The translations under genes and the position numbers were made by a program. The notes below the pieces were generated by a model. The model saw only the letters and a list, made by a program, of their open reading frames with translations, did no database searches and had not been told where the DNA came from. Below are positions 30,067 through 59,602 of a DNA stretch of 64,000 nucleotides, one piece after another (the stretch's first letter is position 1; each line of letters opens with the position of its first letter). The stretch is from positions 62,001 through 126,000 of IMG/VR virus record IMGVR_UViG_3300032296_003307. One strand, 5' to 3'.

Positions 30067-30110
30067 TTAAATTTGGTTTTTACAAGAAAAAAAGTTATAT
30101 TAAAACATAT

Positions 30111-31547
30111 ATGAATTCAAGTTTTGCTTATTTGCCTCCTGACAAAAGGAAAAAGATTATGCTTATTTGTGATGATATTCGAGTTCACTCGGGTATAGCA
30201 ACAGTAGGCAGAGAAGTAGTTATTCACACAGCCCAACATTTTAATTGGGTTAACATTGGAGGAGCCATTAACCATCCTGAAATGGGAAAACGTTTGGATC
30301 TTTCTCAATCAACAAACGATACAACTGGATTGAAAGATTCATCTGTAATAATGTATCCTGTTCATGATTATGGAAACCCTGATCTTTTAAGACAACTAAT
30401 TCAGATTGAAAAACCTGATGCAATAATGTTGATTACTGATCCTCGTTATTTTGTTTGGTTGTTTTCAATGGAAAATGAAATTAGAAAACACATTCCAATT
30501 GCTTACCTTAATATTTGGGATGATTATCCTGCTCCTCACTACAATAAAGCTTTTTATGAGGCATGTGATTTGTTGATGGGAATTTCAAAACAAACAGTAA
30601 ATATCAATAAATTGGTTTTGAGAGAAAAAGCAGCCAATAAAATCATTAAGTATGTTCCTCATGGTTTGAACCACGAAATTTTTAAACCAATTGACAAAAA
30701 CGATTCTAAATTAAAAGAATTTAAGAAAACCTTATTCAAAGGTAAAGAATATGATTTTGCTCTGTTGTTTAACTCTAGAAACATTAGAAGAAAACAAATT
30801 CCAGATACCATTTTATCTTACAAATACTTTATTGATTCTCTTCCAGTTGAAAAAGCTAAAAAATGTGCTTTAGTTCTTCATACAGAACGTGTAAGTGATC
30901 ATGGTACTGATTTGGATGCTGTTATTGAATTGCTTTGTAATGATGAAAAATATAATATTATCTTTACAGATGCAAAATACGATCCAATATCAATGAATTT
31001 GCTTTACAATAGTACTGATTGTCAAATCCTTTTGACCTCAAACGAAGGTTGGGGATTGAGTTTGACAGAAGCTATTTTGTGTGGTAATCCTATTATTGCA
31101 AATACAACAGGTGGTATGCAAGACCAAATGAGATTTGAAGATGAAAATGGAAATTGGTTTACACCATCATCAAAAATCCCTTCTAACCATAGAGGTACTT
31201 ACAAAAAACATGGTGAATGGGCATTTCCAGTTTATCCCGTAACACGTACTCTTGTAGGTTCACCTCCCACTCCTTACATTTGGGACGACCTTTGTAAAGC
31301 AGAAGATGCAGCTCAACGTATTATGGAAGTTTATAATTTAACCCCTGAAGAACGTAAAGCTAGAGGTTTAAAAGGTAGAGAATGGGCAATTGGAGAAGAA
31401 GCAGGTTTTACAGGAGAAACTCAAGGTAAAAGAGTAATAGATGCTTTTGATGAATTGTTTACCACCTGGAAGCCAAGAGAAAAATATGAATTGATAAATG
31501 CAAATCAAGTAGAAGATAGAACCTTAAACCACGAATTATTATATTAA
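30111..31547 (+). CDS. Glycosyltransferase (GT-B, GT4-like)
   Basis: HSGIATVGRE, NSRNIRRK, NEGWGLSLTEA. Confidence 0.85.
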   Translation: MNSSFAYLPPDKRKKIMLICDDIRVHSGIATVGREVVIHTAQHFNWVNIGGAINHPEMGKRLDLSQSTNDTTGLKDSSVIMYPVHDYGNPDLLRQLIQIEKPDAIMLITDPRYFVWLFSMENEIRKHIPIAYLNIWDDYPAPHYNKAFYEACDLLMGISKQTVNINKLVLREKAANKIIKYVPHGLNHEIFKPIDKNDSKLKEFKKTLFKGKEYDFALLFNSRNIRRKQIPDTILSYKYFIDSLPVEKAKKCALVLHTERVSDHGTDLDAVIELLCNDEKYNIIFTDAKYDPISMNLLYNSTDCQILLTSNEGWGLSLTEAILCGNPIIANTTGGMQDQMRFEDENGNWFTPSSKIPSNHRGTYKKHGEWAFPVYPVTRTLVGSPPTPYIWDDLCKAEDAAQRIMEVYNLTPEERKARGLKGREWAIGEEAGFTGETQGKRVIDAFDELFTTWKPREKYELINANQVEDRTLNHELLY

Positions 31548-31558
31548 AATGAAATCCT

Positions 31559-31600
31559 TTTGACACTCATACATATTTATAACAAAATGAGTGTCAAATG
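31559..31600 (+). promoter_or_regulatory. Perfect 12-bp hairpin over the HNH start region with the late promoter in the loop
   Basis: TTTGACACTCAT (31559-31570) pairs with ATGAGTGTCAAA (31587-31598); TATTTATA at 31574-31581; ATG at 31598. Confidence 0.82.
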
Positions 31601-32251
31601 GATTATCAAAAAATATACCACCAAATAGTAGAAAGAGCAAAAAACAGAGTGTTAGAAGGTTATAAAGAAAAACATCATATTATTCCTAAATGTTTAGGTG
31701 GTAGTAATGATAAAAATAACTTAGTGGAACTAACAGCTAGAGAACATTTTTTATGTCATATGTTACTTTGTGAAATATATCCTAACGAAAATAAATTAAG
31801 ACATGCTTTATTTTTAATGGCTATAGGAAAGAAAAAAATTAAAGAAAAAACATATGTTATAAGTTCAAGAGTATATGAAAGATTAAAATGTGAATATTCT
31901 CAAATGTTAACTGGTAAAAAACAATCTGAAGAAACAAGAAATAAGAAATCCAAATCCATGATAGGTCATTCTATGTATACTGAAGAATGGAAACAAAAAA
32001 TAAGTAAATCTAATACTGGAAGAGAAATAACATGGGGTGATAAAATATCTTCTTCTTTAAAAGGAAGAAAAATTGATTGGGATAGAGGAATAAATAAAAC
32101 TATCATACAGTATGATTTAGAAGGTAATTTTATTAAAGAATATTCCTCAATAAATGAAGCTAAAAGACAAATCAAAGGAGATATAGGAGCCATGCTTTCA
32201 GGAAGACAAAAAACTGCTGGTGGTTATATTTGGAAATTTAAAGAAAATTAA
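31598..32251 (+). CDS. HNH homing endonuclease with NUMOD3/NUMOD1-type DNA-binding modules
   Basis: EKHHIIPKCLGGSNDKNNLVELTAREHFLCH, KKQSEETRNK, IIQYDLEGNFIKEYSSINEA...GGYIWKF. Confidence 0.9.
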   Translation: MDYQKIYHQIVERAKNRVLEGYKEKHHIIPKCLGGSNDKNNLVELTAREHFLCHMLLCEIYPNENKLRHALFLMAIGKKKIKEKTYVISSRVYERLKCEYSQMLTGKKQSEETRNKKSKSMIGHSMYTEEWKQKISKSNTGREITWGDKISSSLKGRKIDWDRGINKTIIQYDLEGNFIKEYSSINEAKRQIKGDIGAMLSGRQKTAGGYIWKFKEN

Positions 32252-32274
32252 TTATATTATTTAAAATAAAAAAC

Positions 32275-33570
32275 ATGAATAAGCCGTTATTTGTAATAAG
32301 TTGTGCCTATGATACCTATAGTGGGTATGGGGCTAGAAGTCGCGATTTGGTTAAAGCCATTATTGAAACAGACAAATATGAAGTTAAATTGATGTCTCAA
32401 AGATGGGGAAATACACCTTTTGGATTCTGCAAAGACAATCCCGAATGGACATTCTTATCAAGCCATAACCTACCTAACAATCAGTTGACTCAACAACCTG
32501 ATATTTGGATGCAGATTACTGTTCCAAATGAATTCCAACCAGTAGGAAAATTTAGTATTGGTTGTACAGCAGGTATTGAAAGTACAGTTGCTCCTGGTGA
32601 TTGGATTGAAGGAATAAATAGAATGAATCTGACTTTAGTTTCGTCTGAATTTTCTAAAAAAGTGTTATTGGATTCCAAGTTTGAAAAAAGAAACAAACAA
32701 ACCAATGCTTTAGAAGCTCATGTTCAAGTTGAAAAGCCTCTTGAAGTATTGTTTGAAGGAGCCAACACAAACATCTATAAACAAACAGATGAACCTTGTT
32801 TAATTGATTTCAATATTCCAGAATCATTTGCTTACTTGTTTGTAGGCCACTGGATGGAAGGTGATTTGGGAGAAGATAGAAAAAATGTAGGATTATTAGT
32901 TAAAGCATTCTATGAAACATTTAAAAACAAACCTAAAAAACCAGCTTTGATTTTGAAAGCAGCTCAAGTAGGTGCCTCTTATGTTGATAGAGAAAGTATT
33001 TTAAATAAAATTAAACAAGTTCGTAAAACAGTAAATTCAAAAGATCTACCAAATATTTACCTTTTACATGGTGAATTTTCAGATGAGGAAATGAACTCTC
33101 TTTATAACCATTCTAAAGTAAAAGCAATGGTTAGTTTGACTAAAGGAGAAGGATATGGTCGTCCATTACTTGAATTCACTTTAGTTAAAAAACCTTTAAT
33201 ATGTTCAGGTTGGTCAGGACAAATGGACTTTTTAAATCCTGAATTTACTAATTTGTTAGGAGGTACTTTAACTCCTGTTCACCCAAGTACTAAAAATCAG
33301 TTCTTGATTGAAGGTTCTCAATGGTTCTCTCCTGATCATGGTCAAATAGGTTTTTATTTGAAAGATGTTTTTGAAAACTATAAAAACTATACTGAAAAAG
33401 CAAAACGCCAAGCCTACAAATCAAAAACAGAATTTAACTGGGATAAAATGAAGGAAAAAGTAGATGAATTATTTACTCAATACATTCCTGAGTTCCCAAA
33501 ACAAGTTCCTTTAGCACTTCCAAAATTAAAGAAAATAGAGTTACCCTCTTTGAAAAAAATTGAATCCTAA
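32275..33570 (+). CDS. Glycosyltransferase (GT-B, GT4-like)
   Basis: SGYGARSRD, FVGHW...DRKN, KGEGYGRPLLE. Confidence 0.85.
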   Translation: MNKPLFVISCAYDTYSGYGARSRDLVKAIIETDKYEVKLMSQRWGNTPFGFCKDNPEWTFLSSHNLPNNQLTQQPDIWMQITVPNEFQPVGKFSIGCTAGIESTVAPGDWIEGINRMNLTLVSSEFSKKVLLDSKFEKRNKQTNALEAHVQVEKPLEVLFEGANTNIYKQTDEPCLIDFNIPESFAYLFVGHWMEGDLGEDRKNVGLLVKAFYETFKNKPKKPALILKAAQVGASYVDRESILNKIKQVRKTVNSKDLPNIYLLHGEFSDEEMNSLYNHSKVKAMVSLTKGEGYGRPLLEFTLVKKPLICSGWSGQMDFLNPEFTNLLGGTLTPVHPSTKNQFLIEGSQWFSPDHGQIGFYLKDVFENYKNYTEKAKRQAYKSKTEFNWDKMKEKVDELFTQYIPEFPKQVPLALPKLKKIELPSLKKIES

Positions 33571-33620
33571 TAAAAGGGGTATATTTGGAAATATAAAAAT
33601 AATTAATTACATTTAATAAT

Positions 33621-34082
33621 ATGAATTTTGATGAATTAACAATATGTCCTCGATGTGGAGGAGATGCCAATTATGTAGATGAAGTAAATGAAAGCATATC
33701 TACTCAGTTTTGCTTTTCATGTGGTTTTCAAACCAACTCATTAATGAAAGAAGGTGAAACCTTTTATGAAGAACAAATTTCAATTTTACCTGAGCTTTAT
33801 AAAGATTTGCTTTACAAAGATGAAAATGAAAATGTTTGGATGCCAACTACAGTAAATGTTCCTACTCAAGGAATGATATTTGCAAATGGTCCTTCTAAAG
33901 AACAATGGAAATGGGCAGCTGTAAAAGCAATTCAAGTAACAGAAGAAGAAAAAACTAAATACCCTATCCCAGGAAAACAAGGACAATACTATGAATGGAG
34001 AATGGATATGACAACTTTGAAAGAATATCATGAGCGTGAGTTTATGGATTGTTTAAGCTATATTGGAGTACTTCCAGAATGA
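33621..34082 (+). CDS. Hypothetical protein with zinc ribbon
   Basis: CPRCG...CFSCG. Confidence 0.65.
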   Translation: MNFDELTICPRCGGDANYVDEVNESISTQFCFSCGFQTNSLMKEGETFYEEQISILPELYKDLLYKDENENVWMPTTVNVPTQGMIFANGPSKEQWKWAAVKAIQVTEEEKTKYPIPGKQGQYYEWRMDMTTLKEYHEREFMDCLSYIGVLPE

Positions 34083-34687
34083 TTAGCTTGGCTATAACTG
34101 TATGTAATGAAGCTCATGAGCTAGAAACACTACTAACTTATTTAGAAGATAGAGCTTTATCTCATGAATATGAAATAGTAATTCAAATTGATAAAGACAA
34201 TCACACCGATGAAGTATTGAGTGTTATTGTCAACAGAGGAATAAAACATTGGTTTTATCCTTTAAATAAAGACTTTGCTGGTTACAAAAATGAATTAGCA
34301 AAACACTGTTCAGGAGAATATATCTTCCAAATCGATGCTGATGAAATTCCAGCAATAGAATTACTTGATATACTTCCAGGCATATTAGAAAGTAATCCTG
34401 AGGTGGATGTATACTTAGTTCCTCGGATTAATACCGTAAGTGGTATCACCGAGGAACATATCCTGAAATGGGGTTGGAAATATGAAAATGAAAGAGTAAA
34501 TTTTCCTGATTATCAGTGGAGAATTTATAGAAACTCTCCTTCAATAAAATGGATAAATAAAGTTCACGAGCGTTTGGAAGGTTATAAACTATTTAGTACA
34601 TTACCTCCACAGGATGAATTCTGTTTATTACATCCAAAAACAATAGAAAGACAAGAAAAACAAAACCAGTTTTATAATACATTGTGA
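34079..34687 (+). CDS. Glycosyltransferase family 2
   Basis: ISLAITVCNE, YIFQIDADE, FPDYQWR, VHE. Confidence 0.82.
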   Translation: MISLAITVCNEAHELETLLTYLEDRALSHEYEIVIQIDKDNHTDEVLSVIVNRGIKHWFYPLNKDFAGYKNELAKHCSGEYIFQIDADEIPAIELLDILPGILESNPEVDVYLVPRINTVSGITEEHILKWGWKYENERVNFPDYQWRIYRNSPSIKWINKVHERLEGYKLFSTLPPQDEFCLLHPKTIERQEKQNQFYNTL

Positions 34688-35496
34688 AAATAAAAGCAGC
34701 TCATTTTGATAAAAATGTATTTGAAGATAAATTAAAACATTTGTCTCATTTAGATTTTTCTCTATTTATTGATACTCCCCCTCAATCCCAAGATGAATTA
34801 TCTCCAATAAACATCATCTCGTTCCAGGAACCAAATGAATATTTTGGTCTTCATGATTGGACTATTCAAAATAAAGACCTATTTCAAATTATTTTAACTC
34901 AAAGTGATAAAGTATTAAATAATTGTGATAATGCTGTTTATCAACCTTTTGGACATACTTGGTTACAACCAAATCAATATGAAAAAAAACATAAAAAAGA
35001 ATTTAAAATAGCTCATCTTCAAGGTAAGTTACTTAAAACATATGGTCATTCTTTAAGACATGAAGTAACAGCTAGAAAAAATGAATTTAATATTCCTACT
35101 AAGTTTTATGAAACATATGGAGACAGAAATAATATTGAAGATGCTCGTTTAGGCAAAGAATTTATTTTTGGGGGTTCTCAATTTGGAGTGGTAATTGAAA
35201 ATACTTCCCATAGAGGTTATTTTACTGAAAAAATATTAGATTGTTTATTATTGAAAACAATTCCTTTATATTGGGGTTGCTCAAATATAGGTGATTATTT
35301 TGATATAGACGGTATTATACCGTTTAATAATGTAGATGATTTAATTTACATATCAAATAATTTAACTGAGGAATTTTATGAATCTAAAAAAGAAATAATT
35401 AATAAAAATTGGAAATTGGCTTTAAATTACGTAAATTATGAACAAAATATAGTTAACACAATTACAAACATTTTTAAACACAATAATATTATATGA
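34684..35496 (+). CDS. GT10 (fucosyltransferase)-like glycosyltransferase
   Basis: FGVVIEN...YFTEKILD...TIPLYWG. Confidence 0.7.
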   Translation: MKIKAAHFDKNVFEDKLKHLSHLDFSLFIDTPPQSQDELSPINIISFQEPNEYFGLHDWTIQNKDLFQIILTQSDKVLNNCDNAVYQPFGHTWLQPNQYEKKHKKEFKIAHLQGKLLKTYGHSLRHEVTARKNEFNIPTKFYETYGDRNNIEDARLGKEFIFGGSQFGVVIENTSHRGYFTEKILDCLLLKTIPLYWGCSNIGDYFDIDGIIPFNNVDDLIYISNNLTEEFYESKKEIINKNWKLALNYVNYEQNIVNTITNIFKHNNII

Positions 35497-36635
35497 AAAA
35501 AATATGGTATGCTCCTTATAAATTTGAATCTTATGGGGAAGAAGAAATTAAAGCAGTAGAAGAATCACTCCGTTCAGGATGGTTAGGTGGACAAGGTCCA
35601 AAATCTGTTGAGTTTGAAGAAAAAATAGCAAAACGTTTTGGAAAAAAATACGGTGTATTTGTTAATTCAGGCTCTTCGGCTTGTTTACTTGCATTAGCTA
35701 GTTTACAATTACCAAAAGGTACTAAAGTAATTACTCCTGCTTGTACGTTTTCCACAACATTAGCACCTATTATTCAACTAGGACTTATTCCGGTATTTGT
35801 AGATGTAGGGTTAAATGATTATGTAGCAGATATTGAACAAGTGATAGAGGCTGTTACTCCTGAAGTAAAAATAATTATGTTACCTAATTTAATTGGTAAT
35901 AAACCAGATTGGAAAAAATTAAAAAATGATTTAAAATATTTAGGTAGAAAAGATATAATATTAATTGAAGACTCAGCAGATACTGTAACCTATACTCCTG
36001 AATCCGATATTGCTACAACTAGTTTCTATGCTTCACATGTTATCACAGCTGGTGGTTCAGGTGGGATGGTAATGTTTAATGATAAAAAATTAGTAAATGT
36101 TTGTTTACAATTTAGAGATTGGGGTAGATTAGGAGGTGATTCTGAAATTATGTCTGAACGTTTTAATCATATGGTAGATGGTATTCCTTATGACCATAAA
36201 TTCTTGTATAGTGTCTTAGGATATAATTTTAAATCATCTGAAATGAATGCTGCTTTTGGTTTAGTTCAATTAGAACGTTTTAAAACATTCGAACAAATTA
36301 GAAGAGCAAATGTTGAGCGTTATATTGAAAATCTTAAAGATGTAGAAGAAATTTTGTTACCTGATGATTCAATTAAACCAAATTGGTTAGCTATTCCTTT
36401 GCAAACTGAAAGACGTTTTGAACTACTTAACTTCCTTGAAGATAATAACATCCAAACCAGAGTAACCTTTGCTGGAAATGTAACACGTCACCCTGTTTAT
36501 AGAGAATATCTACAAGAATTTACTAATTCAGATACTATTATGAAAAACGGATTCTTGTTAGGTGCTCATCATGGAATGACTATCGAGGATGTAGATTATG
36601 TTTGTGATAAAATCAAAGAATTCTTTAAAAAATGA
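35493..36635 (+). CDS. PLP/PMP-dependent NDP-4-keto-6-deoxysugar 3-dehydratase (DdhC/RfbH/ColD-like)
   Basis: VNSGSSA, IEDSAD, SFYASH (His in place of the Schiff-base Lys), FRDWGR, YDHKF...GYN. Confidence 0.8.
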   Translation: MKKIWYAPYKFESYGEEEIKAVEESLRSGWLGGQGPKSVEFEEKIAKRFGKKYGVFVNSGSSACLLALASLQLPKGTKVITPACTFSTTLAPIIQLGLIPVFVDVGLNDYVADIEQVIEAVTPEVKIIMLPNLIGNKPDWKKLKNDLKYLGRKDIILIEDSADTVTYTPESDIATTSFYASHVITAGGSGGMVMFNDKKLVNVCLQFRDWGRLGGDSEIMSERFNHMVDGIPYDHKFLYSVLGYNFKSSEMNAAFGLVQLERFKTFEQIRRANVERYIENLKDVEEILLPDDSIKPNWLAIPLQTERRFELLNFLEDNNIQTRVTFAGNVTRHPVYREYLQEFTNSDTIMKNGFLLGAHHGMTIEDVDYVCDKIKEFFKK

Positions 36636-37240
36636 TAGATTTAAAAAAACGTATATTAGAAATAGCCTATAAAAATAAATTAAGTCACTTGGGTTCATAT
36701 CTCTCTAGTTTAGAAATAATAGAAGAAATATACAAAAAGAAAAACCCAGAAGACATATTTATCTTATCTTCAGGACATGCTGCTTTAGCTTTATATGTTG
36801 TTTTAGAAGCATATGAAGGTAGAAATGCTGAAGAATTATTTAAAAAACATGGTGGTCATCCTCATAGAGATGAAAAAAACGGATTGTATTGCTCCACAGG
36901 AAGCTTAGGTTTGGGGATAACAATAGCAGTAGGTAGAGCATTAGCTAATCCGAAACGTAAAGTTTATGTTTTGATTAGTGATGGTGAAGCTGCTGAAGGT
37001 TCCATTTGGGAATCTTTAAGATTTATTTATGAACAAAATATAAAAAATATAGAAGTATATGCTAATATAAATGGTTATGCTGCTTATGATAAAATAGATG
37101 TTGAATATTTAAGTAAAAGATTATTATCTTTTTTACCTAACATAAATCTACGTTATACATCAGTAAACCAATATCCCTTTTTAAAAGGTATAAATGCTCA
37201 TTACCATGTAATGTCAGAGGAGGACTATAAATTAATATGA
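36632..37240 (+). CDS. Transketolase-like N-terminal (TPP-binding) subunit
   Basis: SHLGS, LSSGHA, STGSLGLG, SDGEAAEGSIWE. Confidence 0.85.
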   Translation: MIDLKKRILEIAYKNKLSHLGSYLSSLEIIEEIYKKKNPEDIFILSSGHAALALYVVLEAYEGRNAEELFKKHGGHPHRDEKNGLYCSTGSLGLGITIAVGRALANPKRKVYVLISDGEAAEGSIWESLRFIYEQNIKNIEVYANINGYAAYDKIDVEYLSKRLLSFLPNINLRYTSVNQYPFLKGINAHYHVMSEEDYKLI

Positions 37241-37707
37241 GAAAAGAATTCGCTTCAATACTCCATTCAGAAATGTCTCAAAATGAAAATATTATTTTGT
37301 TAACTGGAGACTTAGGGTATGGAATGTGGGATAAAATTAAAATAGATTATCCTGATAGGTTTTATAATACTTTATCAGCTGAACAATTAATGATGGGGGC
37401 AGCCATAGGAATGGCTATGGAAGGTAAAATTCCTATAGTTTATTCAATAACTCCTTTTGCTATTTATAGACCATTTGAATTAATAAGAAATTATTTGAAC
37501 CATGAAAATATACCTGTAAAAATAGTAGGTGGAGGTAGAGATAAAGAATATGGATACTTAGGTTTTTCACACTGGGCTGAAGAAGATATTGATGTTTTGT
37601 CAAATTTTAAAAATTTGGCCTTATTTAAACCAAAAGAATTCTCTGATAAAATATTTAGTGATTTTTTATATAACCAGAAACCATCTTATTTAAATTTGTC
37701 TCGATGA
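37237..37707 (+). CDS. Transketolase-like pyrimidine-binding subunit, short
   Basis: LTGDLG, AEQLMMGAAIGMA, RPFELIR, GFSHWAEED. Confidence 0.82.
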   Translation: MRKEFASILHSEMSQNENIILLTGDLGYGMWDKIKIDYPDRFYNTLSAEQLMMGAAIGMAMEGKIPIVYSITPFAIYRPFELIRNYLNHENIPVKIVGGGRDKEYGYLGFSHWAEEDIDVLSNFKNLALFKPKEFSDKIFSDFLYNQKPSYLNLSR

Positions 37708-38483
37708 AAATATTAATCACAGGGGGTAATGGATATATAGGTAAGTCATTATATAATGCTTTAAAAGATAAATATGATGTTACTTCTGTAAGTCGAAAAG
37801 ATTTTGATTTAACTGCTTTTGAAGCAATGAATAAATTTTTTCAAGGAAAATATTTTAATGTAGTTATTCATTGTGCTGTTGTAGGAGGTAGTAGATTAAA
37901 AACAGATTCACATAAAGATATGGATGTGAATTTAGTTATGTATTATAATCTCCTTCAACATAAACCCCATTTTAACAAATTAATACATTTTGGTTCAGGA
38001 GCAGAAATACATAATCCTGAATCCCCCTATGGTTTAAGTAAAAAAGTTATATCCAATTCAATATCTGAAATAGATAATTTTTATAATATAAGAATATATG
38101 GGGTATTTGATGAAAATGAATTAGACACTAGATTTATTAAAACTTGTATTAAGAAATACATTAATAAAGAACCAATGTTAGTTCAAGATAAGAAAATGTC
38201 CTTTTTTTACATGAAGGATTTAATAACATTAGTAGATTATTATATCCAATCTTCCCCAAGTACATTATTAAAGGAAAGCAATTGTGCCTATATCAATTCA
38301 ACATCTTTATTAGATATAGCTAATATTATAAATGAATTAGAAGATTATAAAGTTCCTATTTACTTGGATACACAAGTAGGTAAAGATTATGAATCAAAGT
38401 ATAATGCTCCTTACGGATTAAAATACATAGGACTAAAACAAGGTATTATAGAAACATATAATAAATTAAAAAATGAATATTAA
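37704..38483 (+). CDS. NAD-dependent epimerase/dehydratase
   Basis: ITGGNGYIG, YGLSK. Confidence 0.85.
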   Translation: MKILITGGNGYIGKSLYNALKDKYDVTSVSRKDFDLTAFEAMNKFFQGKYFNVVIHCAVVGGSRLKTDSHKDMDVNLVMYYNLLQHKPHFNKLIHFGSGAEIHNPESPYGLSKKVISNSISEIDNFYNIRIYGVFDENELDTRFIKTCIKKYINKEPMLVQDKKMSFFYMKDLITLVDYYIQSSPSTLLKESNCAYINSTSLLDIANIINELEDYKVPIYLDTQVGKDYESKYNAPYGLKYIGLKQGIIETYNKLKNEY

Positions 38484-39414
38484 AATAATGTTCCATATAA
38501 TGCCATGGGATATAGATTGCGCATTATTAGTTTTTGATAAATTAAAACAATCTTCTTATTTTATTGATAATGAAGATAAAATTTATATTGATTCTTTTTT
38601 AAATTTATCACATGATATTATTGATTGGGATAATTCTTCGTTCCCAAAAGAATATTTTATTAAAAAATACCAAATATTAGATGATTTAGTTAAAGATATT
38701 TTTGTACATAAACCTTTTGTATACGATAAAGAAGGTATTTATGGTCATTTAGATTCTCAAAAAACTATAATCGAACCCCACATTGATTATTATGTAGGAT
38801 TATGTCCTGATGTTGACTTTCAAGAACATCTTCTCTATTACCTAATAGAATCAGCAAAACAGATAAAAAATGAATACTTTGTTTTAACTCCACAAATATT
38901 TAAAAGTTGGGATTCAAGTTGGGACCTTTTAGTAAATGACAAATTTCAAAATATTCCCTACAATCAATGTTATAATATTGATATCCATAAAATAAGACAT
39001 GATTGTTTAGAATTAGATACTCCTGCACTTAAACTTTCTCCTGGTTTTAAATTTGCTGGTTGGCTTGATTTGTATAGTAAAAATTTTTATGAAAAATTAA
39101 TACCTACTTTAGATGAATGGAAAGGATATGGTCCTTGGGATTTGTATGCTATGAATGTGTGTAATATTGCAAAATCTAAAGGAGTAGATATTGAACAATA
39201 TATTTTAGAAAATCAAGTAATATGGTTTAAAGATGTAGGTTGTTGGCAAAATGAAGAAGAACATGCAGGTCATGGAAAAATAAGATTAATTTATAAAGAT
39301 TTTTTAACACTAAAACTTGGAAGACAAGAACAAAGATCATACATTGATAAAAATCTTCTTCATTATTTAAATAAATGGATAGAATACGCTAAAAATAATA
39401 ACATAATTAAGTAA
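38473..39414 (+). CDS. Hypothetical protein in the glycan island
   Basis: 313-aa ORF; no firm motif. Confidence 0.6.
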   Translation: MNIKIMFHIMPWDIDCALLVFDKLKQSSYFIDNEDKIYIDSFLNLSHDIIDWDNSSFPKEYFIKKYQILDDLVKDIFVHKPFVYDKEGIYGHLDSQKTIIEPHIDYYVGLCPDVDFQEHLLYYLIESAKQIKNEYFVLTPQIFKSWDSSWDLLVNDKFQNIPYNQCYNIDIHKIRHDCLELDTPALKLSPGFKFAGWLDLYSKNFYEKLIPTLDEWKGYGPWDLYAMNVCNIAKSKGVDIEQYILENQVIWFKDVGCWQNEEEHAGHGKIRLIYKDFLTLKLGRQEQRSYIDKNLLHYLNKWIEYAKNNNIIK

Positions 39415-39417
39415 AAC

Positions 39418-40113
39418 ATGAAAACAATTACAACGTATGAAGATCTAGTTCAAGATCTTATCGACAACAAAATTACAATGGTCCGTCCAGATGAATTCAA
39501 AACAATATTTAAACATTATCCCAAAATATCTGAGGTTGAAGGTGATATAGTAGAATGTGGGGTTTGGAGAGGTGGGTTTTCAATATTTCTAAGTTATGTA
39601 TTTCAAGATAAAAATATTTGGGTATGTGATTCATATGAAGGATTTCAACCTTTAGAAACAGCTAAACATAAATACGATAAAGAAAGACATACTCCTCAAT
39701 TTACACATAACGCTGTAGGTCCATTAGGTATTAGTTTAGAAGAAGTTCAAACCCATTTTAGAAATTATGGTTTAGGAGATCAAGATCGAATTAAATTTTT
39801 AAAAGGATTTGTTAAAGATACTTTACCAACTTCAGGAATTGAGAAAATAGCTTTATTAAGAATAGATGTAGACGCATATTCAGCTACATTAGAAACTTTA
39901 GAAGAATTATATGATAAAGTTCAACCTGGAGGGTATATTATATTTGATGATTCTTGTTTATATGAAACTCTAGATGCTATTAAAGCATTCTTTAAACAAA
40001 GAAATTTACCCGAATTTATAAACCATCCAGTGACTAGTCAACCTTTAAATATTAATGAAAAACACACTAATGATAATTCAGGGTTACCAGCAGGATGTTA
40101 TATTGTAAAATAG
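39418..40113 (+). CDS. TylF/NovP-family sugar O-methyltransferase
   Basis: GDIVECGVWRGG, DSYEG, LKGFVKDTLP, LLRIDVD, GGYIIFDD. Confidence 0.88.
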   Translation: MKTITTYEDLVQDLIDNKITMVRPDEFKTIFKHYPKISEVEGDIVECGVWRGGFSIFLSYVFQDKNIWVCDSYEGFQPLETAKHKYDKERHTPQFTHNAVGPLGISLEEVQTHFRNYGLGDQDRIKFLKGFVKDTLPTSGIEKIALLRIDVDAYSATLETLEELYDKVQPGGYIIFDDSCLYETLDAIKAFFKQRNLPEFINHPVTSQPLNINEKHTNDNSGLPAGCYIVK

Positions 40114-40120
40114 ATAAGAT

Positions 40121-40828
40121 ATGAAAAAAACACTAACACAAATCGCAAATTCAATTGGAATTGATAAAGGAACAATTGCAAATTCATGTCATGGATTTAC
40201 AAAAATGTATGATGATATATTAACTCCTTTAAGAGAAAAACCTATTATTATGTTAGAAATAGGAGTATCTGGAGGTGGTTCTCTTAAAATGTGGGAAGAA
40301 TATTTTTCAGATGCTATAATTATCGCTCTAGACATTGTTAATGAGACTCATTTATCAAATGATAAAACTTTTGTTTACCAATTAGATCAATCTGATGAAA
40401 CTCAATTACAAAATTTTGTAAATCAATGTAAAGAAAATGGATACGAATTTGATTTTATTATTGATGATGGAAGTCATCATATGCGAGATCAACAATTAAC
40501 ATTAGCTTATCTCTTTCCATTATTAAAGTCTCAAGGAATATATGTTATAGAAGATCTCCATACATCTTTACTTCCTAACGGTTATTCATTATATGGAAAA
40601 CTTACAGAAATTTCCCCAGATAGACATAATACCACATTAAATTATCTTTCTCATGGTATAAATAGTATTTATATTACCCCAGAACAAAATATGTATTTAA
40701 ATAAAAATATTGATTCTATTAATATACATAATATATTTAATCCTATTATAGATACATGGCATGAATCTTTAGGTGTAGGAAAACCATATATGGGAAGAAG
40801 TATAACATCCTTTATAATTAAAAAATAA
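40121..40828 (+). CDS. Class I SAM-dependent methyltransferase, sugar O-MTase-like
   Basis: LEIGVSGGGSL, DQSD, FIIDDGSH, YVIEDL. Confidence 0.8.
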   Translation: MKKTLTQIANSIGIDKGTIANSCHGFTKMYDDILTPLREKPIIMLEIGVSGGGSLKMWEEYFSDAIIIALDIVNETHLSNDKTFVYQLDQSDETQLQNFVNQCKENGYEFDFIIDDGSHHMRDQQLTLAYLFPLLKSQGIYVIEDLHTSLLPNGYSLYGKLTEISPDRHNTTLNYLSHGINSIYITPEQNMYLNKNIDSINIHNIFNPIIDTWHESLGVGKPYMGRSITSFIIKK

Positions 40829-40832
40829 GAAT

Positions 40833-41414
40833 ATGAAAATAATTCAAATAGGAGCTAATAATGGAAAGGATAATGTTTTTGATTTTATTAAAGAAAACCA
40901 AAAATCTTTAGAGTTAGCAATATTAATAGAACCTATACCTTTTATTATTGACGAATTAAAATTTCAATATAAAGATATAAATAATGTTATAGTAGAAAAT
41001 ATAGCTATAACTGATGAGGAAAATCTTGAAAAAATGACTTTGTATTATTTAGGAGACAGTAATTATGAGGTAAGTTCATTCAGTAAGAATCATGTTATAA
41101 CCCACAAACCCCCAGGCTCATCATTCCCCTTAGAATCATTAGAAGTTTCTTGCTTAACTATTAATAATATTATGACTAAATATGATCTGGAAGTAATAGA
41201 TTATCTATTTATAGATACTGAAGGATTGGACGTTCATATAATAGCTAGTATCGATTTTGCAAAATATAAAATTAAAAATATAATATTTGAAGCTGTTCAT
41301 ACTGATGGAGCATTTAGTAGAGGTGAAAATTTTAATAAAATATGTAACTATTTAAATCAATTAGGGTATAATTTATCAAATATGGACCAATTAAATATAA
41401 AAGCCAGTCTATGA
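40833..41414 (+). CDS. FkbM-family methyltransferase
   Basis: QIGANNG, LIEP, FIDTEGLD. Confidence 0.8.
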   Translation: MKIIQIGANNGKDNVFDFIKENQKSLELAILIEPIPFIIDELKFQYKDINNVIVENIAITDEENLEKMTLYYLGDSNYEVSSFSKNHVITHKPPGSSFPLESLEVSCLTINNIMTKYDLEVIDYLFIDTEGLDVHIIASIDFAKYKIKNIIFEAVHTDGAFSRGENFNKICNYLNQLGYNLSNMDQLNIKASL

Positions 41415-42148
41415 AAATCATCTACCGTATCTCAGACACAGGTTATAACAAAGTAAAACCAAATTACGTTAACAATGAAAATTGTTTGAGAAATTTCTGT
41501 AATGTATTTTTTGATCATATTTATGATATTATAGTTTTAGCAGACAATTGTAGTGAACCTACTTTAGATATAATTAAAAAATTTATTGACCCAATCAATA
41601 TAGAAAAAGTATCTGTAGGACATGGTGCTGGAACTTTTAATTTGGCTTTAGATAAAGCATTAAAATGGGAAGATGATGAAATAGTTTACTTTGTAGAAAA
41701 CGATTATATTCATTTACAAGGTTCTCCCCAAATTATAAAAGAAGGAATTAAATTAGGAGCACCTTATGTTACTTTATATCTTCATCCTGATAAATTTATG
41801 TCACCTTCTCAAGGAGGTAATCCTGAGGTTGATGAAGATGGAGGTTATTTAACAAGAATTTATAGAGGTGAAACTCAATTATTTGGAATGTTTAATAGCA
41901 CAACTATGACTTTTGCTTCAACAGTAAAAACATTAAGAGAAGACGAATCTATTTTAAGAAAACATACCAACAAAGGTCATTATCCTGATGATTTTAAAAT
42001 GTTTTTGGAGTTAAGAGATAATGGAAAAGCATTATTGTGTCCCTTAAATACTTTTTCCACTCATGGAGAAACAAATTGGTTAGCTCCTTTATATAAAGTA
42101 AAACAAGAAAACCTAGTTGAGGAATGGAAAAAGCATATATTTCAGTAA
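41411..42148 (+). CDS. GT-A-like glycosyltransferase
   Basis: VLADN, YFVENDYIH, STHGE. Confidence 0.6.
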   Translation: MKIIYRISDTGYNKVKPNYVNNENCLRNFCNVFFDHIYDIIVLADNCSEPTLDIIKKFIDPINIEKVSVGHGAGTFNLALDKALKWEDDEIVYFVENDYIHLQGSPQIIKEGIKLGAPYVTLYLHPDKFMSPSQGGNPEVDEDGGYLTRIYRGETQLFGMFNSTTMTFASTVKTLREDESILRKHTNKGHYPDDFKMFLELRDNGKALLCPLNTFSTHGETNWLAPLYKVKQENLVEEWKKHIFQ

Positions 42149-42903
42149 TAATACCTACTTATAAATCACCAGAGGCACTTGATTTGTGTTTACGTTCGGC
42201 TATTGAAGGACAACAAAACAAAAACCAAATCATAGTAGTGGTTGATGGTTTTTATGATTTAAATAAAGAGGTATTAGAAAAATGGAGTCAACATATTGAT
42301 ATTCTAAATTTAGAAGAAAATGTTGGTTTGTGTAGAGGTACTAATTTAGGTGTTTACAACTCTCAGTACGACAAAATACTGATAGTGAATGATGATAATA
42401 TTTTTCCTAAAAATTGGGATGTTGATTTACTAAATTCCTATAAGGAAAATAGTGTTATCTCTCCTAACCAAATTGAACCTATTCCCTCTATATTCAAACA
42501 ATTTAAAATTGAAAATTTAGGTCGTGACCCAAAAACATTTGATTTGGAGGCTTTTTGGGATTATGCTTCAAAAACTTCTTCTCAATTAAACGAGGAATCT
42601 GGCTCTACTTTACCTATATTCATGAAAAAATACGACTATTTAAAAGTGGGAGGTTGGGACGAAAATTATGATATGGGAGTTGTAGCCGATTGGGATTTCT
42701 TTCTAAAATGCACTATCTCAGGAATGAAAATGATAAGAACATATAGTTGTCATTTTTATCATTTTGTTTCTCTAACCACTATGACCCCAGAAAAAGAACA
42801 ACAAAGAAGACAATCAGAACAAAATGGTCATGAATATGCAAAATACAAATGGGGTAGTTATATTTATTCTCATCCTGAAACTAATTTAAAATTTATTCTA
42901 TGA
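42124..42903 (+). CDS. Glycosyltransferase family 2
   Basis: ISVIIPTY, VVVDG, VNDD, GGWDENY, DWDF. Confidence 0.85.
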   Translation: MEKAYISVIIPTYKSPEALDLCLRSAIEGQQNKNQIIVVVDGFYDLNKEVLEKWSQHIDILNLEENVGLCRGTNLGVYNSQYDKILIVNDDNIFPKNWDVDLLNSYKENSVISPNQIEPIPSIFKQFKIENLGRDPKTFDLEAFWDYASKTSSQLNEESGSTLPIFMKKYDYLKVGGWDENYDMGVVADWDFFLKCTISGMKMIRTYSCHFYHFVSLTTMTPEKEQQRRQSEQNGHEYAKYKWGSYIYSHPETNLKFIL

Positions 42904-43058
42904 TATTTGGATTTTATAATAAAAGAGATAAAACACAAGAAACAATTGGACGCACAGTTGGACTTTCAAGATTGGAGGCAGCAAAATACTTTGCCGAGCG
43001 TAAACAACTGTCATTAAAAGAATTTTTAAAAATATTTGGTGTTAAAACAATCATATGA
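42900..43058 (+). CDS. Small hypothetical protein (52 aa)
   Basis: Translated by hand: MIFGFYNKRDK...FGVKTII; coupled at both ends. Confidence 0.5.
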   Translation: MIFGFYNKRDKTQETIGRTVGLSRLEAAKYFAERKQLSLKEFLKIFGVKTII

Positions 43059-44364: not shown

Positions 44365-44389
44365 TAAAATCTAATATTTATAACAAAAT

Positions 44390-44590: not shown

Positions 44591-44600
44591 ATTTACAACT

Positions 44601-44789: not shown

Positions 44790-44791
44790 CT

Positions 44792-45130: not shown

Positions 45131-45178
45131 TTTGGTTTTCTAAAATCCGTTTATTATATTTCCAACAAAAAAACAGTT

Positions 45179-59053: not shown

Positions 59054-59602
59054 ATGAAAGTAGAAACAACACCAATTAAAGACCTTTTGGTAATCACACC
59101 AAAGGTGTATGAAGACGACAGAGGATATTTCTTAGAGTCATTTAACTCAAGAGCATTTCGAGATGCCGGACTATATTACAATTTTGTTCAAGACAATCAA
59201 TCCGTAAGTCTAAAAAACGTAATTAGAGGGTTACATTTTCAAAAAAGTGTACCTCAGGCTAAATTAGTCAGGGTAATTGCCGGTGCAATTTGGGATGTGG
59301 CGGTAGATTTAAGAAAAGGTAGTAAGACCTATGGACAATGGTTCGGTATTGAACTTAATGAAGATAATTTCAAACAACTATTAGTACCAAGAGGATTTGC
59401 ACACGGTTTCTCAGTACTATCGGATGTTGCCGTTGTAAGCTATAAATGTGATGAGATATATATGTTGTCCGCTAGTGGAGGAATTATTTATTCAGACCCA
59501 ACCTTGAAAATAGATTGGAAGATAACAGAAAAACCAATAGTCTCAGATAAAGACGGTGAATTACCTAAATATGAGGATATAATAAAGGAACTTAACTTTT
59601 AG
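59054..59602 (+). CDS. rmlC: dTDP-4-dehydrorhamnose 3,5-epimerase
   Basis: DDRGYF, QDNQS, RGLHFQ, QAKLVR, DVAVDLR, PRGFAHGF. Confidence 0.92.
   Translation: MKVETTPIKDLLVITPKVYEDDRGYFLESFNSRAFRDAGLYYNFVQDNQSVSLKNVIRGLHFQKSVPQAKLVRVIAGAIWDVAVDLRKGSKTYGQWFGIELNEDNFKQLLVPRGFAHGFSVLSDVAVVSYKCDEIYMLSASGGIIYSDPTLKIDWKITEKPIVSDKDGELPKYEDIIKELNF

What the first reader, a model, noticed from the sequence alone, without database searches (positions are those of the whole stretch)
30111..42903. 13-kb phage glycan-building island with deoxy-, branched- and methyl-sugar enzymes
Seen: about six glycosyltransferases of at least three types, a 3-dehydratase, a two-gene transketolase, an epimerase and three methyltransferases in a coupled run; rmlC occurs separately at 59054. 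Known: this enzyme mix makes dideoxy and branched sugars in O-antigen loci, and giant viruses glycosylate their own capsids. Inference: the target is the virion surface, the phage DNA, or host surface glycan (superinfection exclusion). Co-occurrence with a deazaguanine pathway raises possible double protection.
Basis: partly seen in the sequence, partly recalled or inferred. Interest (0 to 1): 0.65.

Follow-up and report, generated by a model that had tools for sequence, protein, structure and literature searches.

The report
Swappable sugar-coat locus of aquatic phage
A widespread group of large aquatic phages, probably of Flavobacteria, carries a fixed set of sugar-attaching enzymes around a swappable cassette that makes rare deoxy, branched and methylated sugars, most likely to coat the virus particle.

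Summary
Window 30111-42903 is a tightly packed + strand run of 16 ORFs: five to seven glycosyltransferases, an RfbH/E1-like PMP 3-dehydratase, a minimal split transketolase, an SDR reductase, three methyltransferases, an orphan zinc-ribbon protein and a homing endonuclease.

Eighty relatives show a conserved frame (GT1a-GT1b-Zn-GT2a, often u245-GT2b) around a 4.4-9.4 kb variable cassette. Directly after the dehydratase, relatives carry either the split transketolase (9 loci), an acetolactate-synthase/YerE-like ThDP enzyme (24) or neither (31), never both. That matches yersiniose-type branched 3,6-dideoxyhexose synthesis.

All island proteins are soluble. The record has no initiating phosphoglycosyltransferase, flippase or polymerase, and no enzyme that would put a hydroxyl on a DNA base.

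The frame is kept in Flavobacterium phage immuto and Microcystis phage Mel-JY01. Published LC-UV-MS of immuto DNA reports dA, dC, dT and fdPreQ1 and no other peak. So a phage-encoded acceptor, most likely a virion protein, is favoured (inferred). Host-surface remodelling is the main rival; DNA is unlikely.

Caveat: the 268.7-kb record looks chimeric. The second sugar island with GMD lies in the other part, and rmlC sits at the break.

Verdict: a new variant of a known kind, of moderate interest.

The parts
30111..31547 (+). GT1a: GT-B (GT4-like) glycosyltransferase, 478 aa. Part of the conserved frame.
   Evidence: Pfam Glycos_transf_1, E 1.5e-7. Found in 73 of 82 related loci at a median 67% identity. 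56% identical to immuto gp181 and 37-51% to Mel-JY01.
31598..32251 (+). HNH/NUMOD homing endonuclease. A mobile insert, not part of the pathway.
   Evidence: Pfam NUMOD1, HNH and NUMOD3. Present in only 6 of 82 loci.
32275..33570 (+). GT1b: GT-B glycosyltransferase, 431 aa. Part of the conserved frame.
   Evidence: Pfam Glycos_transf_1. Found in 73 loci. 58% identical to immuto gp180 and 45% to Mel-JY01.
33621..34082 (+). 'Zn': an acidic 153-aa protein with an N-terminal Cys4 zinc ribbon and a beta-rich domain. Conserved frame member of unknown role.
   Evidence: Invariant or near-invariant Cys9/12/31/34 (alignment A2). AF2 pLDDT 93. No PDB relative: best Foldseek E 0.43, best VIA Z 4.1. One uncharacterised phage relative in BFVD. 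44% identical to immuto gp179.
34049..34687 (+). GT2a: GT-A (GT2) glycosyltransferase. Part of the conserved frame.
   Evidence: Pfam Glycos_transf_2, E 2.1e-8. Found in 76 loci. 50% identical to immuto and 42% to Mel-JY01.
34684..35496 (+). Possible GT10-like transferase, 270 aa. A lead only.
   Evidence: Pfam Glyco_transf_10, E 0.0013, below the cut-off. No PHROG or NCBIfam hit. Found in 36 loci, always just upstream of the dehydratase.
35493..36635 (+). DH3: PMP-dependent NDP-4-keto-6-deoxyhexose 3-dehydratase (RfbH/E1-like) without the E1 Fe-S ligands.
   Evidence: DegT family 245 bits; RfbH model 279 bits. Best PDB hit is E1 (3bcx, E 9e-60), with His aligned to E1 His220. The segment holding E1's cluster cysteines has no Cys in the query. 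78-97% identical in 244 viral contigs. More than 6,600 metagenomic homologues.
36632..37240 (+). TKn: the diphosphate-binding (PP) half of a minimal split transketolase, 202 aa.
   Evidence: Pfam Transketolase_N. Motifs SSGHAA, GHPH, STGSLGLG and SDGE-x26-NING. Best PDB hit is the N-terminal component of a split-chain transketolase (6yak).
37237..37707 (+). TKc: the pyrimidine-binding half of the split transketolase, 156 aa. It has no third domain.
   Evidence: Pfam Transket_pyr, E 7e-13. The 'AEQ' glutamate is present. It occurs together with TKn in 9 of 64 loci.
37704..38483 (+). SDR reductase (RmlD/Fcl-like N-terminus). Proposed side-chain or 4-keto reductase, equivalent to YerF.
   Evidence: Pfam Epimerase, E 6e-17, and RmlD_sub_bind. 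It co-occurs with either kind of ThDP enzyme.
38473..39414 (+). u313: GT-A fold glycosyltransferase, partner of the SDR. Proposed transferase for the branched sugar.
   Evidence: No Pfam hit. AF2 pLDDT 91.5. Foldseek gives 233 PDB hits at E<=1e-3, including LARGE1, Mimivirus R699, LH3, GalNAc-T2 and TarS. Found in 28 loci next to the SDR.
39418..40113 (+). TylF-family sugar O-methyltransferase.
   Evidence: Pfam TylF, E 3.5e-45.
40121..40828 (+). Class I SAM methyltransferase.
   Evidence: PHROG 21658 methyltransferase, E 2.7e-24. Weak Pfam Methyltransf_31.
40833..41414 (+). FkbM-family methyltransferase.
   Evidence: Pfam Methyltransf_21, E 2.7e-19. TIGR01444 above its cut-off.
41411..42148 (+). 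u245: unknown, possibly a divergent GT2-like protein. Paired with GT2b.
   Evidence: No Pfam or PHROG hit. Atlas: five of the top 30 clusters (scores up to 0.98) are ones in which about 30% of members carry GT2. 27% identical to the Mel-JY01 gene that precedes the GT2b homologue.
42124..42903 (+). GT2b: GT2 glycosyltransferase that closes the island.
   Evidence: Pfam Glycos_transf_2, E 2.4e-15. 50% identical to Mel-JY01.
59054..59602 (+). rmlC (dTDP-4-dehydrorhamnose 3,5-epimerase). Its link to the island is uncertain.
   Evidence: TIGR01221, 234.7 bits against a cut-off of 155.75. It lies 1 kb beyond ThyA, the last gene colinear with the complete relative G001. RmlC homologues do occur inside relatives' cassettes.

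Best explanation
The island is the glycan locus of an immuto-like, T4-type myovirus of aquatic bacteria, probably Flavobacteriia.

Organisation. A vertically inherited frame of soluble glycosyltransferases (GT1a, GT1b, the Zn protein, GT2a and, in many relatives, u245-GT2b) brackets a cassette that related phages exchange by recombination.

Proposed pathway in this phage:
1. The cassette takes a host-made NDP-4-keto-6-deoxyhexose, most likely dTDP-4-keto-6-deoxyglucose.
2. A PMP-dependent dehydratase removes the 3-hydroxyl. It has the catalytic His but no Fe-S cluster, so it probably works like ColD without a partner reductase.
3. A minimal two-piece transketolase adds a two-carbon branch to the C4 carbonyl.
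4. The SDR reduces the product.
5. The GT-A enzyme u313 transfers the sugar.
6. Three methyltransferases add methyl groups.

The glycan is assembled in the cytoplasm on a phage-encoded acceptor, most likely a virion protein. Different cassettes give related phages different surface sugars.

Shown: gene identities, catalytic motifs, synteny, cassette variability and the alternation of ThDP enzymes.
Inferred: the nucleotide carrier, the exact sugar, the order of methylation and the acceptor.
For: Enzyme identities.

Pathway logic:
- Among 64 loci with at least 4 kb downstream of the dehydratase, 9 have the split transketolase, 24 have a 597-aa three-domain ThDP enzyme (acetolactate-synthase-like, 350 bits) and 31 have neither. 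None has both. The ThDP enzyme almost always comes with the SDR, and usually with u313.
- This reproduces E1 then YerE then YerF of yersiniose and other acyl-branched sugars (PMC9306805).

Precursor supply:
- The DTR-complete relatives G001 and G003 have no 4,6-dehydratase and no nucleotidyltransferase.
- In about 20 or more relatives an RmlB-like 4,6-dehydratase (281 bits) sits directly after the dehydratase, and 7 loci have a bPGM-RmlA-like fusion.

Frame and cassette:
- In 36 loci with both borders, the cassette spans 4.4-9.4 kb and holds 66 protein families.
- L070 is 97-99% identical in the flanks but carries a different cassette, with the dehydratase at 82%.
- L004 and L008 have more distant flanks but a 96-97% identical transketolase.

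Cytoplasmic, phage-intrinsic acceptor:
- No island ORF reaches the multi-helix threshold of a crude hydropathy scan; two have one borderline segment each. The whole record has only three ORFs of 80 aa or more with at least three predicted membrane-spanning segments.
- No Bac_transf or Glycos_transf_4.
- The frame GTs are 42-58% identical in a Flavobacterium phage and a Microcystis phage. That is as conserved as, or more than, the neighbouring clamp loader and nuclease at about 40%.

DNA disfavoured: and immuto DNA LC-UV-MS (PMC10516641).
Against: - No glycan has been measured on any phage of this group. The acceptor is inferred by elimination.
- The island sits in the replication/nucleotide-metabolism module, not next to structural genes. 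In mycobacteriophages the virion GTs do sit next to structural genes.
- Soluble GTs could equally extend a host undecaprenyl-linked glycan on the cytoplasmic face.
- The nucleotide carrier is unproven. The dehydratase is closest to CDP-specific E1, and some relatives carry GMD in the cassette.
- Whether this transketolase accepts an NDP-ketosugar is untested. No split transketolase has been characterised in that role, to my knowledge.
- immuto has a true aminotransferase-like DegT (25% identity) at the dehydratase position, so its glycan differs.
- No expression data could be obtained.
Confidence: 0.5

Rival explanations
1. Host-surface remodelling. The soluble phage GTs and sugar enzymes feed into the host's own lipid-linked assembly line (O-antigen, capsule or the Bacteroidota general O-glycosylation pathway). 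The infected cell then displays an altered glycan that blocks superinfection or stops progeny from sticking to debris.
For: - The same enzyme mix occurs in bacterial O-antigen loci.
- This is the long-standing reading of 'LPS' clusters in cyanomyoviruses (P-SSM2, PMC1079782; S-SCSM2R, PMC12801897).
- The island lies among early/middle-type replication genes.
- Cassette hypervariability resembles O-antigen loci.
- The precursor is host-derived.
Against: - The record has no initiating phosphoglycosyltransferase, flippase, polymerase or ligase.
- The acceptor-defining GT frame is conserved at 42-58% identity in phages of Flavobacterium and Microcystis, whose envelope glycans differ. It behaves as a vertically inherited core, not as a host-derived moron.
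- These are lytic T4-type phages.
Confidence: 0.25
2. DNA hypermodification. The GTs glycosylate phage DNA bases, adding a second layer of protection to the 7-deazaguanine replacement.
For: - Phage GTs related to LPS enzymes do put mono- to trisaccharides on 5hmC (bioRxiv 10.1101/2023.12.21.572611) and arabinose on 5hoC (PMC13326640).
- YerA41 carries an approximately 1-kDa modification on thymidine that the authors interpret as a novel type of oligosaccharide (PMC9023294).
- The island lies in the DNA-metabolism module, and the phage has DpdA3/QueCDE/FolE.
Against: - No TET/JBP and no C5-methyltransferase in the record.
- Only one ThyA homologue. It keeps the dUMP-type Asn and a thymidylate-synthase-like C-terminus, and its best PDB matches are all true thymidylate synthases at about 220-230 bits.
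- immuto shares the GT frame, and its DNA is reported as dA, dC, dT plus fdPreQ1, with no other peak reported (PMC10516641).
- Five to seven GTs plus tailoring enzymes is far more than known DNA glycans need.
Confidence: 0.06
3. Another cytoplasmic acceptor. The glycan is built on a non-structural phage protein (for example the conserved Zn protein), on a host protein, or on a small molecule. It would then serve takeover or anti-defence rather than coating the particle.
For: - An orphan, acidic, highly conserved zinc-ribbon protein sits inside the GT frame.
- All enzymes are soluble.
- TylF, 3-dehydratase and branched-sugar chemistry is typical of glycosylated secondary metabolites.
Against: - The Zn protein is absent from Mel-JY01, which keeps the GT frame.
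- There is no aglycone-type biosynthetic gene in the island.
- No precedent is known to me.
Confidence: 0.15

Closest known systems
Yersiniose / acyl-branched 3,6-dideoxyhexose pathway (E1/RfbH, then ThDP enzyme YerE, then reductase YerF) of Yersinia, Pectobacterium and Mycobacterium glycans
   Same: The same three steps are encoded side by side: a PMP 3-dehydratase with His in place of Lys, a ThDP-dependent C-C bond-forming enzyme, and an NAD(P)H reductase. Twenty-four relatives use an acetolactate-synthase-type enzyme, the fold class of YerE.
   Different: - The dehydratase lacks the E1 Fe-S cysteines, and no E3 reductase is present.
- In this window the ThDP step is a 358-aa two-piece transketolase instead of a YerE-type enzyme. 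That implies a ketol donor rather than pyruvate.
- The carrier is probably dTDP, not CDP.
- The locus is viral.
Glycosylation gene clusters of giant viruses (Megavirinae fibrils, chloroviruses)
   Same: The virus encodes nucleotide-sugar pathways for rare bacterial-type sugars plus GTs and methyltransferases. The genes are clustered and clade-specific, act in the cytoplasm independently of host glycosylation, and coat the particle (PMC10117803).
   Different: - Those are viruses of eukaryotes with a demonstrated glycan. Here the virus is a tailed phage and the glycan is not demonstrated.
- Cassette exchange here happens between close relatives around a fixed GT frame.
'LPS' / cell-wall gene clusters of large marine cyanomyoviruses (P-SSM2, S-SCSM1, S-SCSM2R)
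   Same: T4-type aquatic phages with one or two clusters of up to 24 sugar genes, many GTs, epimerases and rmlC. Gene content varies, and the function is unproven (PMC1079782, PMC12801897).
   Different: - A different phage lineage and host phylum.
- This island adds the 3-dehydratase plus ThDP branching chemistry.
- It has a defined frame-and-cassette architecture.
Mycobacteriophage virion glycosylation (Freeman et al. 2023, cited in PMC12619734)
   Same: Phage-encoded GTs glycosylate capsid and tail-tube proteins in the cytoplasm. This is the only demonstrated case of tailed-phage virion glycosylation that I know of.
   Different: Only one or two GTs, next to the structural genes, using host nucleotide sugars. 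There is no sugar-tailoring pathway and no cassette variation.
Bacterial O-antigen / capsule loci
   Same: The enzyme repertoire, and hypervariable gene content between conserved flanks that act as recombination anchors.
   Different: No initiating transferase, Wzx/Wzy, ABC exporter or ligase. All products are soluble. The locus is carried by a lytic phage.

Membership tests
PMP-dependent NDP-hexose 3-dehydratases (E1/RfbH, ColD, SpnQ) | DegT/DnrJ/EryC1 fold, with the Schiff-base Lys replaced by His | tested here: met
   PF01041 at 245 bits. In the query, 'SFYASHVIT' aligns with E1 'SFYPAHHIT'; the H220K mutant chain 3bb8 marks the position.
E1 (CDP-6-deoxy-L-threo-D-glycero-4-hexulose 3-dehydrase) proper | [2Fe-2S] cluster cysteines and a partner E3 reductase | tested here: not met
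   The query has no Cys opposite E1 'DCYCAPGCDNTC' or 'EDCCD'. It scores 279 bits against the RfbH equivalog cut-off of 423. No E3-like gene is in the island.
ColD (GDP-4-keto-6-deoxymannose 3-dehydratase) | Close sequence relation to ColD, and GDP-sugar supply (GMD) in the same genome | tested here: inconclusive
   143 bits to ColD against 206 bits to E1. GMD is found in the cassette of only 5 relatives and in the probably foreign part of this record. An RmlB-like dehydratase is the usual neighbour.
Transketolase-type ThDP enzymes (split form) | PP-domain GDG-x(25-30)-N ThDP/Mg motif, TK His motifs, and the Pyr-domain catalytic Glu | tested here: met
   SDGE-x26-NING (first Gly is Ser), SSGHAA, GHPH and STGSLGLG. 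'AEQ' in TKc. Best PDB hit is split-chain transketolase 6yak. Both halves are much shorter than usual, and the C-terminal domain is missing.
Yersiniose-type branched-sugar pathway | 3-dehydratase, ThDP carboligase and reductase acting in sequence on an NDP-4-keto-3,6-dideoxyhexose | not testable with these tools
   Gene adjacency and the mutually exclusive TK/ALS alternation support it. The chemistry needs enzyme assays.
O-antigen / capsule (Wzx/Wzy or ABC) loci | Initiating polyprenyl-phosphate transferase plus flippase/polymerase or ABC exporter | tested here: not met
   No PF02397 or PF00953. No island ORF has more than one borderline hydrophobic segment; the record has only 3 ORFs with at least three predicted membrane-spanning segments.
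Phage DNA glycosylation systems | An enzyme that creates a hydroxylated base (hm/ho-pyrimidine synthase of the ThyA family with Asp for dCMP, or TET/JBP plus C5-methyltransferase), next to the GTs | tested here: not met
   No PF12851 or PF00145. There is a single ThyA with Asn in 'PFNIASY' and a thymidylate-synthase-like C-terminus. The DNA of relative immuto is reported as dA, dC, dT plus fdPreQ1, with no other peak.
Virion glycosylation systems (giant viruses, mycobacteriophages) | Glycan demonstrated on a structural protein | not testable with these tools
   No proteomic or sugar data exist for this lineage. The assignment rests on elimination and on cross-host conservation.

The most novel reading that the evidence does not exclude
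Tailed phages have 'serotypes' of their own. A fixed glycosyltransferase frame decorates the virion, and a recombining cassette, anchored on an ultra-conserved 3-dehydratase, swaps the terminal rare sugar between co-occurring phages. That sugar can be unbranched, branched by a YerE-type enzyme, or branched by a previously undescribed minimal two-piece transketolase. The result would be population-level glycan diversity on virus particles, comparable to bacterial O-antigens. The minimal split transketolase would also be a new class of NDP-sugar branching enzyme, giving a hydroxylated C2 branch not yet described.
Probability: 0.3. Interest if true: 0.75.

Novelty: new variant of a known kind. 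Interest (0 to 1): 0.55.

Why it matters
Sugar-gene clusters in large aquatic phages have been called 'LPS genes' for twenty years without a test of what they modify.

- **Abundance.** This lineage is common: 244 viral contigs carry the dehydratase, and it has thousands of metagenomic homologues.
- **A testable model.** The lineage has a cultured member, Flavobacterium phage immuto, whose DNA composition is already known. The virion-versus-host-surface question can therefore be tested directly.
- **If the virion is the target.** It would extend self-encoded particle glycosylation from giant viruses and mycobacteriophages to T4-type phages of environmental bacteria. It would also imply cassette-driven antigenic diversity of phage particles.
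- **Enzymology.** The interchangeable ThDP enzymes offer a natural experiment on how branched sugars are made. The 358-aa two-piece transketolase may be useful as a small carboligase.

Tried and rejected
- **GMD as precursor supplier.** I first took the second sugar island (record 246-262 kb; GMD, DegT, acetyltransferase, several GTs) to supply the dehydratase with GDP-4-keto-6-deoxymannose. I dropped this when the record proved probably chimeric and complete relatives lacked GMD.
- **'Jumbo phage' label.** Dropped. DTR-complete relatives are 155-172 kb.
- **Near-identical DNA in cultured phages.** None found.
- **Sigma-70 promoter and terminator scan.** At chance level: 91 sites against 90 expected, and 6 against 4.8.
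- **Bacteroidota -7 box TAnnTTTG.** Present 36 and 34 nt upstream of GT1a and Zn, but not significantly enriched in intergenic DNA (6 against 3.2 +/- 1.9).
- **Zn protein fold searches.** PDB Foldseek, VIA wide and BFVD gave no informative relative.
- **Genome-collection scan with the dehydratase.** It returned only MAG/SAG contigs at 74-78% identity, of incoherent taxonomy and without other island genes. This gives neither a host nor a cellular origin. The method finds close relatives only.
- **Moraphage paper (PMC12619734).** It describes a different large-phage lineage with core GTs. I could not link it to this record.

Full report
**1. What is there**

Window 30111-42903 holds 16 + strand ORFs. 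They are separated by gaps of at most 50 nt or overlap by 4-34 nt. Family scans, motif checks and two structure predictions gave the following.

| Coordinates | Assignment | Evidence |
|---|---|---|
| 30111-31547, 32275-33570 | Two GT-B/GT4-like transferases (GT1a, GT1b) | |
| 31598-32251 | HNH/NUMOD homing endonuclease | |
| 33621-34082 | 153-aa Cys4 zinc-ribbon protein ('Zn') | |
| 34049-34687, 42124-42903 | Two GT2 enzymes (GT2a, GT2b) | |
| 34684-35496 | Weak GT10-like candidate | |
| 35493-36635 | DegT-family dehydratase (DH3) | |
| 36632-37240 + 37237-37707 | Two-piece transketolase (TKn, TKc) | |
| 37704-38483 | SDR reductase | |
| 38473-39414 | 313-aa protein with no family hit, GT-A fold by structure (u313) | |
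| 39418-40113, 40121-40828, 40833-41414 | TylF, class I and FkbM methyltransferases | |
| 41411-42148 | Unknown 245-aa protein with a GT2-like Atlas lead (u245) | |

The u313 model has pLDDT 91.5 and gives 233 PDB matches at E<=1e-3, including LARGE1, Mimivirus R699, LH3 and GalNAc-T2.

The homing endonuclease and the zinc-ribbon protein are additions.

**2. The dehydratase**

DH3 scores best against RfbH/E1 (279 bits, below the 423-bit equivalog cut-off). Its best solved relatives are E1 (E 9e-60) and then ColD.

In the alignment, His stands where aminotransferases have the Schiff-base Lys. The H220K mutant chain 3bb8 marks that column. So DH3 is a 3-dehydratase, not a transaminase.

The E1 segments that carry the [2Fe-2S] cysteines have no Cys in the phage protein, and no E3-type reductase is nearby. 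I infer a ColD-like, partner-independent mechanism.

**3. The transketolase**

TKn has the transketolase motifs SSGHAA, GHPH, STGSLGLG and SDGE-x26-NING. TKc has the 'AEQ' glutamate. The best solved match is the N-terminal component of a split-chain transketolase.

At 202 + 156 aa, the pair is far shorter than usual and has no third domain.

**4. Comparative anatomy**

The dehydratase recovers 244 IMG/VR contigs at 78-97% identity. I studied 80 loci. They share two conserved blocks:
- Left block: clamp loader, PD-(D/E)XK nuclease, small ORF, GT1a, GT1b, Zn, GT2a, (GT10-like), DH3.
- Right flank: homologues of window 43055-46555.

Between DH3 and the right flank lies a variable segment. In 36 loci with both borders it spans 4.4-9.4 kb and holds 66 protein families among 276 ORFs.

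A Pfam tally of one representative per family shows:
- many methyltransferases, plus GT2s, RmlC and epimerases;
- TylF, UDP-galactopyranose mutase and UDP-glucose dehydrogenase;
- PanB, a DHQ-synthase-like enzyme and a KAS III.

Cassettes do not follow the flanks:
- L070 is 97-99% identical in the clamp loader, nuclease and GT1a. Yet its DH3 is only 82% identical and its cassette is different.
- L004 and L008 have much more distant flanks, but their DH3 is 93-95% and their transketolase 96-97% identical.

I read this as cassette exchange by recombination, with the highly conserved DH3 as the left anchor.

**5. The branching module**

Directly after DH3, relatives carry one of three arrangements, counted over 64 loci with at least 4 kb downstream:

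| Gene after DH3 | Loci |
|---|---|
| Split transketolase | 9 |
| 597-aa three-domain ThDP enzyme (acetolactate-synthase-like) | 24 |
| Neither | 31 |
| Both | 0 |

Either ThDP enzyme comes with the SDR, and usually with u313. Two unrelated ThDP enzymes replacing each other in one slot, between a 3-dehydratase and a reductase, is the yersiniose scheme. In that scheme E1 makes CDP-4-keto-3,6-dideoxyglucose, YerE adds a C2 branch and YerF reduces it (PMC9306805).

The transketolase version should transfer a ketol (dihydroxyethyl) unit rather than acetyl. That part is inference.

**6. Precursor supply**

Two relatives with direct terminal repeats have no 4,6-dehydratase and no sugar nucleotidyltransferase. 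One is G001 (171.7 kb), which has the same cassette type as this window. The other is G003 (154.8 kb). In these phages the host must provide the NDP-4-keto-6-deoxyhexose.

Other relatives carry their own supply genes:
- In about 20 or more loci, an RmlB-like dehydratase (281 bits to dTDP-glucose 4,6-dehydratase) sits directly after DH3.
- Seven loci add a beta-phosphoglucomutase-RmlA-like fusion.
- Five loci add a GMD.

A dTDP-glucose-derived substrate is the most economical reading. CDP or GDP is not excluded.

**7. What is the acceptor?**

*No membrane machinery.*
- A crude hydropathy scan finds no multi-helix island protein; two ORFs have one borderline segment each.
- The whole record has only three ORFs of 80 aa or more with at least three predicted membrane-spanning segments.
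- It has no Bac_transf or Glycos_transf_4 initiating transferase.

*No route to a hydroxylated DNA base.*
- There is no TET/JBP and no C5-methyltransferase.
- The single ThyA has the dUMP-type Asn and a thymidylate-synthase-like C-terminus.

[quoted passage not shown] PD-(D/E)XK nuclease, then GT gp181, GT gp180, gp179, GT2 gp178, then a DegT enzyme, a methyltransferase and more GTs. Identities to this window are 56%, 58%, 44% and 50% for the four frame genes.

Its DNA was analysed by LC-UV-MS. The paper reports peaks for dA, dC and dT, with dG fully replaced by fdPreQ1 (PMC10516641). No other peak is reported.

*Conservation across host phyla.* Microcystis phage Mel-JY01 keeps nuclease, GT1a, GT1b, GT2a ... 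u245, GT2b at 27-51% identity.

The frame GTs are thus as conserved as, or more than, the adjacent replication genes (about 40%), in phages of hosts from different phyla. That fits a phage-encoded acceptor better than a host envelope glycan.

By elimination I favour a virion protein, as in giant viruses (PMC10117803) and mycobacteriophages. No tool result shows this directly.

**8. The zinc-ribbon protein**

It is conserved in nearly all relatives and models with pLDDT 93. It has no structural relative in the PDB (best Foldseek E 0.43, best VIA Z 4.1). BFVD holds one uncharacterised phage homologue. Its role is open.

**9. Caveat on the record**

The window lies in a 268.7-kb IMG/VR record. 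That record is probably two phages joined.
- It has two Gp23-type capsid genes. It also has colinear second copies of three other head-module genes at 27-47% identity.
- Nine relatives, including both DTR-complete ones and both cultured phages, have one capsid gene.
- Positions 1-120 kb are colinear with G001 at about 70% amino-acid identity, up to ThyA (window 56860-58014).
- Beyond that almost nothing matches, and G001 108-155 kb has no counterpart.

Consequences:
- The island and the deazaguanine genes lie safely in the colinear part. Those genes are DpdA3 12355-13131, QueC, QueD, QueE and FolE, with no QueF or DpdN.
- rmlC lies 1 kb past the break.
- A second sugar island lies in the other part. 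It carries GMD, a DegT enzyme, a hexapeptide acetyltransferase, a GFO/IDH/MocA oxidoreductase, an FkbM methyltransferase and six or more GTs.

**10. Comparison with what is known, and verdict**

Sugar-gene clusters in large aquatic myoviruses are known, but their function is unproven (PMC1079782, PMC12801897). Virus-encoded particle glycosylation is established for giant viruses and mycobacteriophages.

New here:
- the frame-plus-cassette architecture with evidence of exchange;
- yersiniose-type branching chemistry in a phage, with two interchangeable ThDP enzymes, one of them a minimal split transketolase;
- an Fe-S-free E1-like dehydratase that is extremely abundant in metagenomes;
- a cultured relative whose published DNA analysis already argues against the DNA target.

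I rate it a new variant of a known kind, with interest 0.55.

No expression data could be obtained.

Noticed in passing
whole record G000:C1 (window = 62001-126000); break near window 58000-69000: The 268.7-kb record is probably a chimera of two T4-type phages. It has two Gp23 capsid genes (C1:33138-34976 and 236064-237947) and a second colinear head module at 27-47% identity. Only positions 1-120 kb are colinear with a DTR-complete 171.7-kb relative. Relatives have one capsid gene and genomes of 155-172 kb.
   Followed up: yes
L090 (G000:C1:242001-262000), minus strand: A second glycan island in the non-colinear part of the record. It carries GT2, PhoH, GMD (395 bits), an RfbH/PseC-like DegT enzyme, an SDR, an FkbM methyltransferase, a GFO/IDH/MocA oxidoreductase and a hexapeptide acetyltransferase. 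It also has RXYLT1-like, GT15-like, GT2_5 and GT92-like GTs and a further PHROG GT.
   Followed up: partly
window 12355-19459: 7-Deazaguanine DNA-modification set: DpdA3 homologue 12355-13131 (36% identical to immuto DpdA3; missed by Pfam TGT), QueC 14440-15318, QueD 15746-16210, QueE 16213-17025 and FolE 18225-18959. No QueF or DpdN is in the window, so a preQ0-type base is predicted rather than immuto's fdPreQ1.
   Followed up: partly
window 20195-22789 versus NC_055915 37898-40231: A family B DNA polymerase sits here in the slot just upstream of GroES/GroEL. The syntenic relative immuto has a family A polymerase in that slot. This is a case of polymerase swapping within one lineage.
   Followed up: no
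window 31598-32251: An HNH/NUMOD homing endonuclease is inserted between the two frame glycosyltransferases. It is present in only 6 of 82 related loci.
   Followed up: partly
window 33621-34082: A conserved, acidic zinc-ribbon protein inside the GT frame. It models confidently (pLDDT 93) but has no structural relative in the PDB. It is absent from Microcystis phage Mel-JY01.
   Followed up: yes
window 35493-36635 and L094-L096: The dehydratase is more conserved than the replication genes around it: 78-97% identical where GT1a falls to 44%. It has more than 6,600 metagenomic homologues. It also occurs at 74-78% identity, without other island genes, on contigs binned as SAR86, Pacearchaeota and Ignavibacteria. 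Why it is so constrained is unexplained.
   Followed up: partly
window 56860-58850: ThyA is 384 aa, with an approximately 40-aa insert and extra length compared with cellular enzymes. The next gene (58014-58850) is a five-helix membrane protein of the ABC_membrane_3 family with no ATPase partner nearby, directly before rmlC.
   Followed up: no
L040, L021, L035, L019 and other related loci (variable cassettes): Relatives' cassettes include ketopantoate hydroxymethyltransferase (PanB), a DHQ-synthase-like enzyme, KAS III and short-chain dehydrogenases. These could make longer or hydroxylated keto-acid donors for the YerE-like enzyme, as proposed for erwiniose and caryophyllose.
   Followed up: no
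window 30068-30075 and 33580-33587: Bacteroidota-type -7 boxes (TAnnTTTG) lie 36 and 34 nt upstream of the GT1a and Zn start codons. The motif is not significantly enriched in intergenic DNA of the window.
   Followed up: yes
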